DNA of 53,824 nucleotides. Source: Vitrella brassicaformis CCMP3155. Taxonomy: Eukaryota > Protista > Chromerida. The stretch is from positions 1-53,824 of the forward strand of contig CDMY01000546.1 in assembly GCA_001179505.1 (NCBI GenBank). Reading direction: 5' to 3'. The position numbers were made by a program, and so were the translations under genes. Under the pieces are notes generated by a model. The model searched no databases. It was not told the origin of the DNA and worked only from the letters and a program-made list of their open reading frames with translations. Below are positions 24,094 to 29,947 of the stretch, in pieces (position 1 is the first letter of the stretch; the number at the start of each line of letters is the position of its first letter).

Positions 24094-24632
24094 GATGACC
24101 CAATGGTGACTTGGGAGGCCGAGCGATGCGACAACCGACTAATGGTCGACACGTCAACACACAAATTCGCTGAACGGGTCCGGGAAGGTCAACATGCGGC
24201 TGCCAGGTGGAGGTAGGAATCTCGTGACGGTAGGAATTCCTACGATCGGTGCCGTCTCACCAAGACCTCTCTCAACAGAAACACAGAGGACCCGTTGGAC
24301 TCCTAGGCTCTCCGCACGCAATTCGAAGCCGGTGTTAACGAGCTCGGCCCCCAGTCCACTTGACGAGCAATCCCTGCTCTAAGCTATTTTTCGGCGGACT
24401 CCCTCCAAACTGCCGTCGCGATTTGCACATGCATGGCATGTTTCATAACCATCCACAGCACATGCAGCTAGAAGAGGTGAGAGCATTGAGGGGAGAAACC
24501 ATTGGATTGAGTCAGACAGTCAGTCAGTCAGTCCACTCGTTCACAAGTGTGGCAACGCAGCGCATGATGCATCCATCGACTCCCTCCATGAGATGATGAG
24601 ATGGCCCGGCGTCCGTCCGTTCTCTCAAGCAG

Positions 24633-27536
24633 TCATCCATCGCTCCCATCGGGCTCCCGAGGGAGGAGCGGCCGATCCATCCAGTCGGCCACCTCCTGCG
24701 GCAAGGACGACGACGGGCCAGGTCCATCACCATCACCATCACCACCACCACCCGCCACAGCCCAGTCCCCTGCCGATTCTGAAGCAGATGATGCCGCTCC
24801 CTCTCCCCCTCCCGCAGCTGCAGCACCACCACCACCACCAGCAACACCAGCACCAGCACCACGGGTTGATGGCTGCCGCGCCCCAGGCCCCACAAACAAG
24901 GCGCGCCACCACGGCCTTGTGGGAGGCTGTTGTGTGGGTTGTGTGGCGTTGGTTGTGCTGCCGTCGGATGGACTGCTGTTGCTGCTGCTGGAGGGTGGTG
25001 CGGGAGGGCGGGTGGTGCGGCCACTGCGGCCGCGGGGGGGCGGGGCTGCGCCGACGGCTGAGCGGAGGTCGGTCTTGCACAAGGGGCACTCGAAGGAACG
25101 CTGCAGCCTGCAGACAGACACAACCGCACCAAGGCGAGACGGAGAGCGTGTGTGTGTGTGTGTGTGTGTTCCTTCCTGCGTGTGTCGTGATGTGATGTGT
25201 GATGGGTTTGGCTTGCTTGTACCACTCGTCGATGCACTGTCTGTGGAAGTATTGGTTGCAGCACGGCAACTTACGAAGCCAATCTGGTGGAACACACACA
25301 ACAAGCACACCGACCGGTCAGACCCACAGACAGACAGACAGACAGACAGACAAGGTGAACGGATGGATGGCTGACGCTGTAGTGTGGTCCAAGTGTGTGC
25401 CGCGCGGTGCGGTGTGTGTACCTCCAGGTTCTAGGTCTCCCAGGCAGATCATGCACTTGGTGTCGGACCCGATGCTGCTCCCGCTGCCGCTCGCACTCCG
25501 GGACGGCGATGCACGCGCGCCGAGACTCTCATACCCACCCCCACCACCATCCCCACCAGCTGCTGCCGCCGGACGGGTGGTGTCTGCAGCCAGCACCATG
25601 CAAACCATGCATAAGGATTCCACACAGAACAGAGTGTAGGTGTGTGTGTCGGACCTTTCATCTGAGTGAGCGGCAGTTTGTTGAGCTGTGCCTCCGTCAT
25701 GCCGCGGGGCCGCCTGCCGGGGGCCAACCCGCTCGCAGTCAAGATGCGCTGATATAATGGACGAAGCAAACCGTCATTGATCACCCACATTAGATCTATC
25801 TTGCGGCCTGCCTGCCTGTCTCTCCGTGTGTGTGTGTGTGAGTGTCTGCGACATACCTCTACGTCGGATTGGCTGAGGTCCGTGTTGTTGAGGACGTAAA
25901 GCTGCAGCGGGGGCGGCAGGTGGCTGATGGTGGCTGCACAAAGAGAGAGAGAGAGAGAGAGGCGCACCGCACACAAGAGGTACACCACCTCACTGTGTGA
26001 GTGTCTGTCTGTCTGTCTGTGTGCGTCCTCACATACCGAGCACTTCTCGTGGCAGCAGGTTGCGGATGGTGGGGGCAAGAGCTGCATTCACACACGCGCA
26101 CACGCACACACACACACACACACACGTGAGACGAGACCAGGCCACGGAACGGCCAAACACAGCGAGGCAGCTGTGTGTGTGCTTGTGCTTACTTCCAGAG
26201 CAATGCACTGTGGTTTCAGGTCCAACCCGAAGGAAGGCGTCAGGCTCTGCGATGACCAGCCGGAACTGCACACCCTGGTAGGTGAAGATGTCGCCCACAC
26301 GGAAACGCTGCACACGCAGAGAGAGAGAGAGAGAGAGAGAGGAGGAGATGAGATGAGATGACTGTGTGCAGTGAGAGGGCCTATCTATGTGTGGTGTGCA
26401 TATTCTGTCTTGACAAGACAAGACGTGCCCACCTTGAGGGGGTTGGTCTGCAGGTAAGGCCTCAGGTAGTCGTCCCACAGGTTGAAGCCATACGTGCGGG
26501 CCGTCGGCAACGTGTCGGAGAACGGCACAAAGTGAACCTGATAAGTGGATGGATGGATGGATGGACACGGGAAGGAACCGCAGGGAGGGAGGTGTCTGTC
26601 TGTCTGTGTCCGTTGTGTCCATGTTCTGTGTGCTGCTGCTGCTCTGTCTGTGCGAGGTGGAAAGAATTCACCGACCCTGTTGAATTCTCCCGCGCCATCC
26701 CAGTTGGCGTGGACGAGTGTGGTCTTGACGACCAAACCCATGCGGTTGTTGGGCCGCGTCGCTGCAGGCACCACACCACACGCCACACACATCCATCCAT
26801 CCATCCCTTCGCCAAGCCACACGTGTGACCAGTGTGGCCCGACCGACCTGAGCACACGACGTTGACCCCGTCGCAGTCGTATTTCCTGTTAGGCATGGCC
26901 ACCAGGAAGGGATTCGACTCGATGAAGGGCTTCACATACAACAGCCACAAATCCTGGTGGACACACAACACAACCAACACAACACAACACATGTCCATAA
27001 GCTATGCTGTGTGGATGGATGGATGGATCCCAGCCCACATACCTCATCTGAGCAGACTTGTTCGGCGTCGGGGTCCTTGGTCGTGGCGGCAAACTGGACA
27101 CGCTCCAGCTCTATCAACGGAGGACCCTCAGTGAACACATGAGTCTGACACACACAACACACAACACACAACCACACACACAGCCACACAATCCATCCAT
27201 CCATCCATCCATCCATCCATCGAGAGCCTTTCTGCATGTCTGTGGCACATCCGCCAGACCCACCTGTGAGTTGACCATCCCCTCATCAGGCTCCGCCTCA
27301 ATCACGACGAAATCCCTCCGGCACTGCGTGGTGATCTTGGTCCACCGCCTGACATGTGGGTTGGCCCGGAGGTGACTCATCACCGCCTCCCTCTCGCTCG
27401 CATCCGCCTCGGCGATGTCATTGACGTCAGACCGCAGAGGCAGGATGTGCACCTTCGATACCCACCTGTCGTCACCGCCTCCATTGGTGTGTGCTGGGAA
27501 AAGCGGCTCGTCGGGAGGCGCCGAAGCGTCTGCCAT
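24633..27536 (-). CDS. RING-H2-type E3 ligase with three tandem Cdc48/p97 N-domain subdomain-2-like repeats
   Basis: The third repeat HFVPFSDTLPTARTYGFNLWDDYLRPYLQTNPLK|RFRVGDIFTYQGVQFRLVIAEPDAFLRVGPETTVHCSG aligns by eye to p97 HVLPIDDT..NLFEVYLKPYF..RKGDIF..VEFKVVETDP..VAPDTVIHCEG. Two more degenerate copies lie upstream. RING: CMICLGDLEPG|DWLRKLPCCNQYFHRQCIDEW|LQRSFECPLC. Confidence 0.85.
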
Positions 27537-27564
27537 CGTCAGCCTTTGCGGTTTTTTCCTGAGC

Positions 27565-27595: not shown

Positions 27596-27630
27596 GACTG
27601 TCGCCTGTTGCTTGTGCTTGATCCGTTTCT

Positions 27631-27654
27631 TCATTCATTCATTCATTCATTCAT
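27631..27654. repeat. (TCAT)6 microsatellite in the RING/UBA3 spacer
   Basis: tcattcattcattcattcattcat seen directly. Confidence 0.95.
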
Positions 27655-27699
27655 CGCCTCGCTGGGTCACTGGAGATCAAGAAGTGATCAAGTTTCAAG

Positions 27700-29947
27700 A
27701 TGGTGGGTGACGGCGATGTGGTGATGAGTGACGGTGCGGACCGGCATAAGCACCTGTGCAAGGTGCTCTACCGCAAGAGCCCCTTCGCCGACGAAGACTG
27801 CTTCCAACCTGGAGAGGAGGTCAGTCAGATCTCACACGCAGACACAGCGACAGATCGGCATCGGCATGCAGTGCACGGCTGTATATATTCTGTCTGTCGT
27901 GTGGACCAGACCCGCAAGTATCTGCAGGAAGAGTGCAAAGTGCTCGTCATCGGAGCGGGCGGGCTCGGTGAGTGAGTGGGGGGATGGGTGGGTGATCCCC
28001 TTTGTTTGTTTGCGTGGTACGTCTTAAGCTGACGCGTGTGTGTGTGCTCTGTGTGTCTGCGTGTCTGACTTCAGGCTGTGAGATTCTCAAAGATTTGGCG
28101 CTGAGTGGCTTCCGCGACATTCACGTCATCGACATGGACACCATCGACATCACTAACCTCAACAGACAGTTCCTCTTCAGGCAAACAAAACACACACACA
28201 CACACACAGATTGGGCCGTCGGACCCCATGGTTGTGTGTGTGATGTGATGTGATGTGATGGGTTGTGGTGTGGTGTGTTTAGGAGTCGGGATGTGGGTCG
28301 TCCGAAGGCTGACGTGGCGGCCGACTTCATCAACAGGCGGTGCGGCCACATGGGCGTCAACGTCACGCCACACAACTGCAAAATACAGGACTACGCTGAG
28401 GACTTCTACTCACAGGTACCGTCACGCCACCGACACTCGTCCATCAGTAGAGGTGCATGGGTGTGAGTGGTCTGGGCGTGTGTGTGTGTGTGTTGTCTGG
28501 TGGGTGGGTCAGTTCAACGTGATAATAGCCGGTCTGGACAACATCACTGCTCGTCGGTGGATCAACTCGCTCCTTCACACAATGGTCGAATTCGACGAAG
28601 ATGAAAACCCTGATGGATCGACCATCAAGGTAGGTACCCACACACACACCTGCACTGCACACACGACTGCACACACGACTGCACAGTGACTCTCTCTCTC
28701 TCTCTCTGTGTATGTGTGTGTGTCTGTCTGTGTGTCGGCCAGCCTCTGTTGGATGGCGGCACTGAGGGTCTGAAGGGCCAGAGCCGTGTCATCATCCCCT
28801 ATATGACGTCATGCTTCGACTGCTCACTCGACTCATTCCCGCCACAGGCAATGAATGCACCACACACAGAGACAGAGGGAGAGACAGAGAGAGAGACAGG
28901 GAGAGAGAGAGAAAGAGGGATTCTTTTGACACGTGTGTGTGAATGTGTGTGCTGTGTATTGTGTGCTGAAGGTGAATTATCCCATGTGTACCATTGCCGA
29001 GACGCCCCGTCTGCCGGAGCACTGCATCGAGTACGTCCTCGTCGTCGAGTGGGACAAACACTTCCCTAACAGGAAACTGGTGCTCACCTCTACACAACAA
29101 ATCAAACCAAACCAAACCACCACATGCACACCGCATGGCGATCATGTGTGTGTGTGTGTGCGTGAGTGTGTGTGTAGAATACCGATTCCCCTCAGGACAT
29201 GAAGTGGATCTTCGACCAGGCTAAGGAGCGGGCCGACACGTTCGGCATCCGCGGCGTCACATACTCTCTCACCATGGGAGTCGTCAAGGTGGGTGCGCCA
29301 ACACACACAGGAGCCAACACACACACACACACACAGACGTGAAGCGAACCTCTTTGTGTGTGTCTGTGTGCAGCGGATCATTCCAGCGGTGGCCTCGACC
29401 AACGCACTTATCGCTGCGTCACTCGTCAATGAGGTAGCCACACCACACCACACCACACCATACCCAGCTGACTACTCCGCTCACTCACACGCCAGTCGTG
29501 TGGTGTGGTCAGGCGCTGAAGATCTCCACGTACTGCGGTCCGGTGCTGAACACTTACATGATGTACATGGGCAACGAGGGCGTCTACATACACACATTCG
29601 AATATGAAAAGAAAGACGTACGGACGGGCGAACGAATGCACCGCACGACGGGCGGGGCGGACGTCACCAGACCACACCACTCCCAAGGGGCTGGGCTACA
29701 CACACACATACACACACACACACACACAGACAGAGACACAAACAGTGGCTGTGCTGTGCTGTGCTGTCTGTCTGTGTGTGTCAGGACTGTTTGGTGTGTT
29801 CGGGTACGATCCGCAACCTGTCCATGCCCGCCGCCACCTCACTACAGGGACTCATCGACAGGTCGGTATGTCGGGATGGACTCACTGACTGATTGTGCAC
29901 ACACACATGCCCATGCACACCACACCCCCGGCAAGGGGCTAGCATCT

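What the first reader, a model, noticed from the sequence alone, without database searches (positions are those of the whole stretch)
26080..27536. Three tandem p97/Cdc48 Nc-like modules fused to a RING: a possible p97-mimic E3 ligase
Seen: three repeats with the pattern V.(I/F).P..D....LW..Y(L/V)(R/K)P(Y/F)...F.V...EP..G.V...T.V...G, with no double-psi barrel and no AAA domain, followed by a helical linker and a RING. Established: the p97 N domain (Nn+Nc) binds UBX, VIM and SHP cofactors and ubiquitin, and Ufd1 shares the fold. Inference: isolated Nc repeats act as substrate, ubiquitin or cofactor receptors for a lineage-specific ligase.
Basis: partly seen in the sequence, partly recalled or inferred. 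Interest (0 to 1): 0.7.

Follow-up and report, generated by a model that had tools for sequence, protein, structure and literature searches.

The report
RING ligase with three Cdc48-Nc modules
A transcribed Vitrella brassicaformis gene encodes a ubiquitin-ligase-type protein whose front half is three copies of one small piece (Nc) of the Cdc48/p97 unfoldase; relatives occur in dinoflagellates and a coccidian, standard domain annotation misses the repeats, and what they bind is still untested.

Summary
On the minus strand, 27536-24633, lies a 12-exon gene with 11 GT-AG introns. Spliced transcript contigs from four runs support the introns. Its product is the 566-aa database protein P0001 (Vitrella brassicaformis, named only "RING-type domain-containing protein").

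Residues 26-263 are three tandem ~80-aa modules. Family profiles of each module hit only the Nc subdomain of Cdc48/p97 in the PDB (E 1e-9, 1e-4, 1e-11). AlphaFold models superpose on p97 residues 107-192 (Z 13.2 and 11.6; repeat 1 alone Z 9.1). There is no Nn barrel and no AAA domain.

A conserved helical linker leads to an RNF12/RNF13-like RING-H2 finger (Pfam E 2.6e-11). In Vitrella its fourth zinc ligand is Gln, next to an extra Cys.

Collinear relatives at 30-35% identity occur in dinoflagellates (Effrenium, Biecheleria), a truncated Cystoisospora model and an unidentified sludge eukaryote. The triplication predates the Vitrella-dinoflagellate split.

Pfam CDC48_2 never reaches threshold, and I found no paper on this architecture.

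Most likely this is an E3 ligase whose Nc array binds extended peptides such as SHP boxes. That function is inferred, not shown. The scan had already noted a related gene elsewhere in this genome.

The parts
24633..27536 (-). Coding region of the gene: 12 exons, 11 GT-AG introns, 566 codons plus stop. Exons are 27536-27264, 27144-27043, 26953-26848, 26761-26676, 26537-26433, 26307-26193, 26081-26037, 25933-25857, 25748-25655, 25583-25422, 25283-25223 and 25107-24633.
   Evidence: The exon model translates exactly to P0001. Spliced contigs in runs X1, X2, X7 and X8 support the joints.
27537..27554 (-). 5' untranslated region, minimum extent
   Evidence: Transcript contigs reach 27550-27554 (table 8).
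24481..24632 (-). 3' untranslated region, minimum extent
   Evidence: The X8 contig runs unbroken from 24481 through the stop codon.
27109..27461 (-). Nc-like module 1 (aa 26-103), crossing intron 1. It is the most diverged module in its helix.
   Evidence: Profile A2 against the PDB hits the Cdc48A/p97 Nc subdomain at E 1.1e-9. Modelled alone, it matches Nc-type subdomains in the top 18 rows (Z 9.2-5.5; CDC48A-N Z 9.1, 26% identity), followed by a drop to Z 3.5.
26682..27108 (-). Nc-like module 2 (aa 104-187), crossing introns 2 and 3
   Evidence: Profile A3 against the PDB hits the Cdc48A/p97 Nc subdomain at E 1.2e-4. Model residues 99-181 superpose on p97 106-186 with Z 11.6 and rmsd 1.7.
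26080..26681 (-). Nc-like module 3 (aa 188-263), crossing introns 4-6. It is the most p97-like module.
   Evidence: phmmer aligns it to human p97 112-187 at E 1.5e-7. Profile A4 gives E 1.2e-11. The model superposes with Z 13.2, rmsd 1.6-2.0 over 81 residues at 32% identity. Against the genome's own Cdc48 Nc the shuffle z is 22.
25459..26079 (-). Linker (aa 264-376). It contains a conserved helical segment (L.PS.RNLLP...LPP.LQ), an "RG(L/M)..xx(I/L)..L" pre-RING segment, and a Vitrella-specific Gly/Ser-rich disordered insert (aa ~338-371).
   Evidence: Alignment A1 shows invariant or near-invariant L264, P266, R269, L271, L272, P284, Q288 and G319. The model has helices at 268-308 and pLDDT below 50 for 338-371.
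25074..25458 (-). RING-H2-type finger (aa 377-420), crossing introns 10 and 11. The sequence reads C-x2-C ... PCCNQYFH-x2-C ... C-x2-C-K, and the fourth ligand position is Gln.
   Evidence: Pfam zf-RING_2 scores E 2.6e-11, 44 bits against a cut-off of 27.3. Model residues 318-425 superpose on the RNF12 RING-Ube2d2 complex at Z 12.2 and on the RNF13 RING at Z 11.7. Homologues have the canonical C-x-H-x2-H at this site.
24636..25073 (-). Low-complexity C-terminal tail (aa 421-566; Pro/Ser/Gly/Ala-rich). It is absent from the relatives.
   Evidence: Sequence. The homologues end shortly after the RING.

Best explanation
This is a real, expressed gene for a soluble RING-H2-type ubiquitin ligase. 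It belongs to a family found in chromerids, dinoflagellates and probably coccidia. The substrate- or adaptor-binding part is an array of three modules descended from the Nc subdomain of Cdc48/p97.

Proposed mechanism:
- The C-terminal RING recruits a UbcH5-like E2~Ub. The usual E2-contact residues are present: Ile in C-x-I-C, Trp in IDEW, Pro in CPLC, and a basic residue after the last Cys.
- Each Nc module offers the exposed sheet and groove that, in p97, captures the SHP box by beta-strand addition, and that in Ufd1 captures an extended ubiquitin tail.
- The array would therefore hold proteins carrying short extended hydrophobic motifs (SHP-box-like Cdc48 adaptors or other clients) for ubiquitination.

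Shown: the gene structure, its transcription, the domain homology and fold, the family and its range, and the age of the triplication.

Inferred: E3 activity, peptide binding by the Nc modules, and the identity of the ligands.

Rough odds: the architecture as described 0.95; the family acts as E3 ligases 0.7 (Vitrella copy 0.55, because of the Gln ligand); the Nc array is the ligand receptor 0.5; the ligand is SHP-like 0.2. The overall confidence of 0.5 is for the statement as a whole (an E3 ligase with the Nc array as its receptor).
For: - Gene and transcript: the exon model equals P0001. Spliced contigs in four runs from three studies support the introns.
- Nc homology by sequence: repeat 3 against human p97 112-187 gives E 1.5e-7. 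Profiles of repeats 1, 2 and 3 against the PDB give E 1.1e-9, 1.2e-4 and 1.2e-11. All hits are Cdc48/p97-type chains in the same register.
- Nc homology by fold: Foldseek's top 50 are all p97/Cdc48. VIA-align gives Z 13.2 for repeat 3 and 11.6 for repeat 2, and 9.1 for repeat 1 in an unbiased search of 48,161 chains.
- Repeats are homologous to each other.
- RING: Pfam hit above cut-off, plus RNF12/RNF13-like structure that includes the pre-RING segment.
- Family: 30-35% identity over about 98% of the length, in Effrenium voratum, Biecheleria cincta and many marine transcripts. A partial Cystoisospora suis gene and a sludge-metagenome gene also belong.
- Age of the triplication: repeat-2 and repeat-3 modules each form positional clades that include the Vitrella copy (support 100/99 and 95/95).
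- SHP-contact positions of p97 (R113, H115, L117, F131, V166, V176, I182, H183; PMC5042407) are kept in kind in repeat 3. The count is K/R in 14 of 15 members, H in 14 of 15, V/L/I in all 15, F in 13 of 15, V in 14 of 15, I/V at 182 and an aromatic at 183. The R/K-x-H-x-L strand is also kept in repeat 1.
- Nc-type subdomains are known to bind extended peptides by strand addition (PMC5042407; bioRxiv 10.64898/2026.03.13.711538).
Against: - No biochemical data exist for any member.
- Pfam CDC48_2 does not reach its cut-off: P0001 has no hit, and 9 of 15 relatives hit only at E >= 0.003.
- In Vitrella the fourth RING zinc ligand is Gln, with an inserted Cys beside it. Transcript contigs over the RING exons showed no base differences from the genome. 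Zinc site II and E3 activity may therefore be altered.
- Part of the SHP pocket differs. F139/L140 become L plus a polar residue, H183 is F/Y in most members, and repeat 2 has Q for H115.
- Several of the conserved positions may be kept for folding or for packing between repeats. The inter-repeat geometry is uncertain (pTM 0.52).
Confidence: 0.5

Rival explanations
1. General p97 decoy. The modules imitate the whole p97 N domain and soak up or ubiquitinate UBX, UBXL, VIM and VBM cofactors.
For: The modules clearly derive from Cdc48 itself, not from NSF, Pex1 or Ufd1: the PDB sequence hits are Cdc48/p97-type chains only. The same genome also carries a Cdc48 N-D1 paralogue (L019) that an earlier scan note describes as fused to a RING.
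Against: UBX, UBD, VIM and VBM all bind the cleft between Nn and Nc (PMC5042407, section 19). There is no Nn here: Pfam gives no CDC48_N hit, and structural matches start at p97 residue 106/107. Only Nc-only ligands are structurally possible.
Confidence: 0.08
2. Ubiquitin-chain reader or chain-extending ligase. The Nc modules bind ubiquitin, or its exposed C-terminal segment as the Nc of Ufd1 does, so the ligase extends chains on already ubiquitinated or partly unfolded clients.
For: The Ufd1 UT3 Nc groove binds the unfolded ubiquitin tail at Kd 17 nM (bioRxiv 10.64898/2026.03.13.711538). Repeat 1 modelled alone matches Ufd1 117-190 at Z 8.8. The divergent paralogue type (P0017, and the Vitrella C312 gene) carries a ubiquitin-interacting-motif-like helix.
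Against: By sequence the modules are much nearer to Cdc48 Nc than to Ufd1: no Ufd1 chain appears. The Ufd1 groove residues were not examined. There is no direct test.
Confidence: 0.15
3. Structural array only. The three modules serve as a rigid scaffold or an oligomerisation platform and bind no ligand. Targeting would come from other parts, such as the PX domain or lipid anchor seen in relatives.
For: Some relatives carry an N-terminal PX domain (P0016, P0034; E 4.6e-12) or start with Met-Gly, so localisation signals exist outside the array. Repeats 1 and 2 are much less conserved than repeat 3 (22-31% against 47-53% identity to P0001).
Against: Exposed strand residues (K/R-x-H-x-L) are nearly invariant in repeats 1 and 3. 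The three-module order has been kept since before the Vitrella-dinoflagellate split.
Confidence: 0.15
4. The Vitrella copy is a degenerate, ligase-dead relative of an otherwise active family, that is, a pseudo-E3 or adaptor.
For: The fourth zinc ligand is His-to-Gln with an inserted Cys. There is also a 35-residue disordered insert before the RING and a 146-residue low-complexity tail, both absent from relatives. The Vitrella modules sit on long branches.
Against: The gene is transcribed and correctly spliced and its reading frame is intact over 12 exons. All other RING ligands and the E2-contact residues are kept. A second member with a "PCC...H" RING exists (P0035), which suggests a tolerated variant.
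Confidence: 0.2
5. Artefact: chance similarity, a pseudogene or a mis-assembled locus.
For: None beyond the weak self-similarity of the single sequence.
Against: Transcripts, an exact database protein, a conserved family, and highly significant profile and fold matches.
Confidence: 0.01

Closest known systems
Nc subdomain of the Cdc48/p97/VCP N domain (Pfam CDC48_2, PF02933)
   Same: Same fold and clear common ancestry. Repeat 3 is 32% identical to p97 107-192 (Z 13.2, rmsd 1.6-2.0). All three repeat profiles hit p97 112-190 in register. Most SHP-contact residues are kept in repeat 3.
   Different: The module is present three times in tandem, without the Nn double-psi barrel, without the N-D1 linker and without AAA domains. 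It is fused to a RING. The Pfam model does not reach its cut-off.
Ufd1 UT3 domain and the N domains of NSF/Sec18, Pex1/Pex6 and VAT
   Same: They share the Nc-type subdomain: Z 8.8 for Ufd1, and Z between 7.0 and 7.8 for Sec18p/NSF-N, Pex1/Pex6, the PEX1 N domain and VAT-N, all with repeat 1 modelled alone. Ufd1's Nc binds an extended peptide, the ubiquitin tail.
   Different: No sequence-level match to these proteins. All of them pair Nc with an Nn barrel.
Nc-like domains outside AAA/Ufd1 proteins: PH1500 N-terminal domain (2jv2, 2m3x) and the DEPDC5/Iml1 N-terminal region
   Same: They match repeat 1 in fold: Z 7.4 for PH1500 and 9.2 for DEPDC5. An IML1 cluster also appears in the Atlas structure search.
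   Different: Each has a single copy in an unrelated context (a hexameric archaeal protein; the GATOR1 subunit). Neither has a RING, and sequence similarity is low (10-21% identity).
RNF12/RLIM, RNF13 and RNF38-type RING-H2 ligases (Pfam zf-RING_2)
   Same: The RING and the short segment before it superpose on the RNF12 RING-Ube2d2 complex (Z 12.2) and on the RNF13 RING (Z 11.7). The relatives have the canonical C3H2C3 ligands.
   Different: The N-terminal receptor part is unrelated. The Vitrella RING has Gln at ligand 4 and an extra Cys.
Vitrella Cdc48 N-D1 paralogue, noted as fused to a RING (earlier scan finding s1-231075; G000:C22, L019)
   Same: The same genome carries another gene built from a piece of Cdc48.
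   Different: That gene keeps Nn, Nc and a D1 ATPase half with a changed Walker B. Its RING is said to be IAP-type. I confirmed only its N-D1 part, not the RING.

Membership tests
CDC48_2 / Nc subdomain (Pfam PF02933) | Score above the Pfam gathering cut-off (22.4 bits) | tested here: not met
   P0001 and its cut-out repeats give no CDC48_2 hit at E<=1. Nine of 15 family members hit only below threshold, best E 0.0031.
CDC48_2 / Nc subdomain (Pfam PF02933) | Significant sequence homology to the Nc of solved Cdc48/p97 structures, in register | tested here: met
   phmmer gives E 1.5e-7 for aa 188-263 against p97 112-187. Repeat profiles give E 1.1e-9, 1.2e-4 and 1.2e-11.
CDC48_2 / Nc subdomain (Pfam PF02933) | Beta-alpha-beta(3) Nc fold | tested here: met
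   AF2 pLDDT is 86-94 across the repeats. VIA-align gives Z 13.2, 11.6 and 9.1 with rmsd 1.6-2.2.
Cdc48/p97 AAA ATPase | Nn double-psi barrel (CDC48_N) before Nc | tested here: not met
   No CDC48_N hit. Only 25 disordered residues precede repeat 1.
Cdc48/p97 AAA ATPase | D1 and D2 AAA domains | tested here: not met
   No AAA family at E<=1 in P0001, and none in the 15 relatives.
RING-H2 E3 ligase (zf-RING_2, PF13639) | Pfam score above cut-off | tested here: met
   44 bits against a cut-off of 27.3, E 2.6e-11, aa 377-420. Fourteen of 15 relatives match.
RING-H2 E3 ligase (zf-RING_2, PF13639) | Eight zinc ligands with C3H2C3 spacing | tested here: not met
   Vitrella reads PCCNQYFH where relatives read PC-x-H-x-F-H. 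Ligand 4 is Gln398 and there is an added Cys395. Seven of eight ligands are canonical. The relatives meet this feature.
RING-H2 E3 ligase (zf-RING_2, PF13639) | E2-contact residues (Ile after Cys1, Trp before Cys7, Pro in C-P-x-C, basic residue after Cys8) | tested here: met
   CMIC, IDEW, CPLC and K420 are read from P0001. Which residues contact the E2 is from my own knowledge of c-Cbl/RNF38-type RINGs.
RING-H2 E3 ligase (zf-RING_2, PF13639) | E2-dependent ubiquitin transfer | not testable with these tools
   Needs an in vitro assay.
SHP-box receptor (p97 Nc surface) | Conservation of the contact residues R113, H115, L117, F131, F139, L140, V166, V176, I182 and H183 | tested here: inconclusive
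   In Vitrella repeat 3, five of ten are identical and three more are conservative. F139 is Leu and L140 is Gln. The family keeps K/R, H, V/L, F, V, I/V, I and an aromatic. Repeats 1 and 2 keep only part of the set.
SHP-box receptor (p97 Nc surface) | Physical binding of an SHP peptide | not testable with these tools
   One complex prediction gave no verdict. It is not evidence either way.

The most novel reading that the evidence does not exclude
A ligase family of dinoflagellates, chromerids and coccidia uses a triplicated Cdc48 Nc module as an SHP-box reader. It would then ubiquitinate, or compete with Cdc48 for, the SHP-bearing adaptors (Ufd1, p47/Shp1-like proteins, Derlins). That would be a dedicated regulator of the Cdc48 adaptor pool, built from a piece of Cdc48 itself.
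Probability: 0.15. Interest if true: 0.8.

Novelty: new variant of a known kind. Interest (0 to 1): 0.6.

Why it matters
RING ligases and the p97 N domain are both well known. I know of no described case of an Nc subdomain cut loose from its Nn partner, triplicated and used as the front end of a ligase, and I found none in the paper library.

The family is invisible to standard annotation: its members carry only RING domain labels. It is nevertheless conserved across dinoflagellates and a chromerid, and probably reaches coccidian parasites.

It offers a natural test of what an isolated Nc surface can bind (SHP-type motifs or unfolded tails). Together with the N-D1 paralogue noted in the same genome, it suggests that pieces of Cdc48 were reused more than once in this lineage. 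If a Toxoplasma orthologue exists, the function could be studied genetically.

Tried and rejected
- **Pfam on single exon-bearing open frames**: nothing, because the exons are too short.
- **phmmer of exons 5 and 6 alone against the PDB**: nothing.
- **CDC48_2 family search of the genome**: found only the true Cdc48 (C603), not this locus.
- **Exon-wise searches of the genome**: only the locus itself, plus matches to the low-complexity intron read-through.
- **My first model used a GC donor after ...DEWYK.** The transcript joint showed a GT donor six bases upstream, so I corrected it.
- **P0002 and P0003 from the big HMMER search** are repeat-protein noise.
- **Complex prediction** of P0001 20-275 with the SHP-like exon of a Vitrella Ufd1 gene (L022:327-443:-): verdict "no answer", score 0.00, controls not run. 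This is not evidence for or against binding. The peptide also lacked the first Phe of the box, which lies in the preceding exon.
- **Search for more apicomplexan members with the Cystoisospora protein**: only itself. The tool's length window and word index limit this search, so it says little.
- **The Cystoisospora gene model starts at base 74 of its contig**, so its repeats 1 and 2 could not be checked.
- **Looking for the earlier-noted Vitrella paralogue:** P0017, P0035 and the C356 RING locus failed. Profile A2 finally led to G000:C312.
- **ESM Atlas by features:** uninformative, score 0.75.
- **Paper searches for the architecture:** none found.
- **High-depth long-range "joints"** (24531-24533 to 26786-27010): I take these for artefacts of the GGAT/CA intron repeats, because the flanks are short (19-22 bases) and the ends are not GT-AG.
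Full report
**What the DNA is**

The window is eukaryotic. It has short exons and GT-AG introns filled with (CA)n, (GGAT)n and (CT)n tracts. Its assembly has 72.7 Mb in 1064 contigs. The database names the protein's source as Vitrella brassicaformis CCMP3155.

**Gene model**

- Reading the minus strand in three frames, I built a 12-exon model by hand.
- The hand-joined protein was never sent to any search tool. It was assembled only inside local scripts, for coordinates and repeat statistics.
- A whole-library HMMER search with exon 1 (window:27264-27536:-) returned a 566-aa protein, P0001, 100% identical over the exon.
- Contigs of four public runs from three studies, laid on 3.4 kb of the window, are spliced. 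Joints or abutting pieces show ten of the eleven introns directly. Intron 7 lies inside a 120-letter bridge whose length matches exons 7 and 8.
- One joint corrected my exon 11 donor to a GT six bases upstream.
- The corrected model is 27536-27264, 27144-27043, 26953-26848, 26761-26676, 26537-26433, 26307-26193, 26081-26037, 25933-25857, 25748-25655, 25583-25422, 25283-25223 and 25107-24633. It translates exactly to P0001, and all 11 introns are GT-AG.
- The transcript reaches at least 27554 upstream and 24481 downstream.

**The observation**

The three repeats are aa 26-103, 104-187 and 188-263.
- Within the single protein they are only weakly alike (shuffle z 3.5 for repeats 1 and 3, 6.0 for 2 and 3, none for 1 and 2).
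- With family profiles the repeats are plainly homologous (hhalign probability 98.3, 98.6 and 96.6%).

**Are they Nc modules?**

- Repeat 3 aligns to the genome's own Cdc48 Nc with a shuffle z of 22, and to human p97 112-187 at E 1.5e-7.
- Fifteen collinear relatives gave separate profiles for each repeat. Each profile hits only Cdc48/p97-type chains in the PDB, always at p97 residues 112-190. E-values are 1.1e-9, 1.2e-4 and 1.2e-11.
- An AlphaFold2 model of aa 1-430 is confident over the repeats (pLDDT 86-94). Foldseek's top 50 are all p97/Cdc48.
- VIA-align places model residues 183-267 on p97 107-192 (Z 13.2, rmsd 1.6-2.0, 32% identity) and residues 99-181 on p97 106-186 (Z 11.6).
- Repeat 1 modelled alone was searched against 48,161 chains without Foldseek. 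Its top 18 rows are Nc-type subdomains: CDC48A-N Z 9.1, Ufd1 8.8, NSF/Sec18, Pex1/6, VAT-N, PH1500 and DEPDC5. The score then drops from Z 5.5 to 3.5.
- There is no Nn barrel and no AAA domain. Pfam finds only RING families at E<=1.
- The Pfam CDC48_2 model itself stays below threshold in every member. This explains why these proteins are annotated only as RING proteins.

**The rest of the protein**

- After repeat 3 comes a conserved, mostly helical segment (L.PS.RNLLP...LPP.LQ). Next is an "RG(L/M)...L" segment, a Vitrella-only disordered Gly/Ser insert, and the RING.
- The RING scores above the zf-RING_2 cut-off (E 2.6e-11).
- Together with the pre-RING segment it superposes on the RNF12 RING-Ube2d2 complex (Z 12.2) and on the RNF13 RING (Z 11.7).
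- Relatives have the canonical C-x-H-x2-H. Vitrella has C-C-N-Q-Y-F-H, so ligand 4 is Gln and an extra Cys precedes ligand 3. Transcript contigs over the RING exons showed no base differences from the genome.
- A sludge-metagenome member also has "PCC...H".
- The E2-contact residues are present (their role is from my own knowledge).
- The 146-residue low-complexity tail is Vitrella-specific.

**Family and history**

- Full-length relatives (30-35% identity, about 98% coverage) come from MMETSP, EukProt and Logan transcriptomes. The named ones are Effrenium voratum and Biecheleria cincta, both dinoflagellates.
- A profile search added several more:
  - a form with an N-terminal PX domain (P0016, P0034);
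  - a divergent type (P0017, P0035);
  - a Cystoisospora suis gene model cut off by its contig start, which retains only repeat 3, the linker and the RING;
  - the source of P0035, an intron-poor 45-kb contig from activated sludge.
- In a tree of all modules, repeat-2 and repeat-3 modules form positional clades that include the Vitrella copy (support 100/99 and 95/95). The triplication is therefore older than the Vitrella-dinoflagellate split.
- The three modules of P0017 group apart on long branches, so their history is unclear.
- An earlier scan note reported a second three-Nc RING gene in this genome. I located Nc-like exons and a ubiquitin-interacting-motif-like helix at G000:C312:105573-108656 (local HMM E 2e-5 and 3.6e-5).
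- The genome also has a Cdc48 N-D1 paralogue with an altered Walker B (L019).

**How it most likely works**

- By homology, the C-terminal half is an E2-recruiting RING-H2.
- The Nc array is the only candidate receptor.
- UBX, UBXL, VIM and VBM partners of p97 need the Nn-Nc cleft, so they are excluded here.
- The SHP box binds Nc alone, by adding a strand next to beta-11 and contacting R113, H115, L117, F131, F139, L140, V166, V176, I182 and H183 (PMC5042407).
- The Nc of Ufd1 binds an extended ubiquitin tail in a similar way (bioRxiv 10.64898/2026.03.13.711538).
- In repeat 3 most of these positions are kept across the family. The K/R-x-H-x-L strand is also nearly invariant in repeat 1. Repeat 2 and the F139/L140 pocket differ.
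- I therefore favour an E3 whose Nc modules hold short extended motifs. SHP-like adaptors of Cdc48 are the most specific, but unproven, candidates.
- One complex prediction with a Vitrella Ufd1 SHP-like exon gave no verdict.

**Novelty**

Paper searches found nothing on this architecture. The library is incomplete, so this is weak evidence of absence. I rate it a new variant of a known kind: a RING ligase with a new receptor built from Cdc48 Nc modules.

Noticed in passing
window 27607-29600 (+): The neighbouring gene, head to head, is a ThiF-family E1-like enzyme (Pfam ThiF E 4.8e-14). By eye it looks like the NEDD8 E1 catalytic subunit. Its transcript contigs start by 27607, and the RING gene's reach 27554. 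The two ubiquitin-system genes therefore share a promoter region of only about 50-100 bases.
   Followed up: partly
G000:C312:105573-108656 (L031, + strand): A second gene in the same genome with Nc-like exons (RLHLLPI..., LFARYIKPFF, VRFKVVALTPPQGFITRETV), a ubiquitin-interacting-motif-like helix (EDMRLAMQLQQ) and a run of N in the assembly. It is probably the paralogue noted earlier as s1-233309, and it resembles P0017.
   Followed up: partly
I did not look at its RING part.
   Followed up: partly
window 25223-25283 (exon 11): The Vitrella RING reads PCCNQYFH where relatives read PC-x-H-x-F-H. The fourth zinc ligand is Gln and a Cys is inserted. A sludge-metagenome relative (P0035) has PCCNPHPGHYFH.
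   Followed up: partly
G000:C501, C480, C477 (L021-L023): Three Ufd1_N1-like loci lie in the genome. The C480 gene has an SHP-like box (LFGGTGVRLDGK) at the start of an exon (L022:327-443:-). Several Ufd1 copies would fit a plastid ERAD-like system beside the cytosolic one, but I did not test that.
   Followed up: no
window 26537/26676 and L001 (G000:C603): An intron lies at the very start of the Nc module in both genes. It falls between K and RVHVLP in the genome's Cdc48, and between R and VHFVPF in repeat 3 here, one codon apart and both in phase 0. This is compatible with exon-wise capture of the module, or with coincidence.
   Followed up: no
window 24514-24627 and 26566-27135: Very high summed contig depth and many long-range "joints" with 19-22-base flanks fall at GGAT/CA repeat tracts in the 3' UTR and in introns 1-4. 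I take these for repeat-driven assembly chimeras in the run contigs, not splicing.
   Followed up: no
P0016, P0034 (relatives, not in the window): Some dinoflagellate-type members carry an N-terminal PX (phosphoinositide-binding) domain. Several others start with Met-Gly. Both hint at membrane-attached forms of the family.
   Followed up: no
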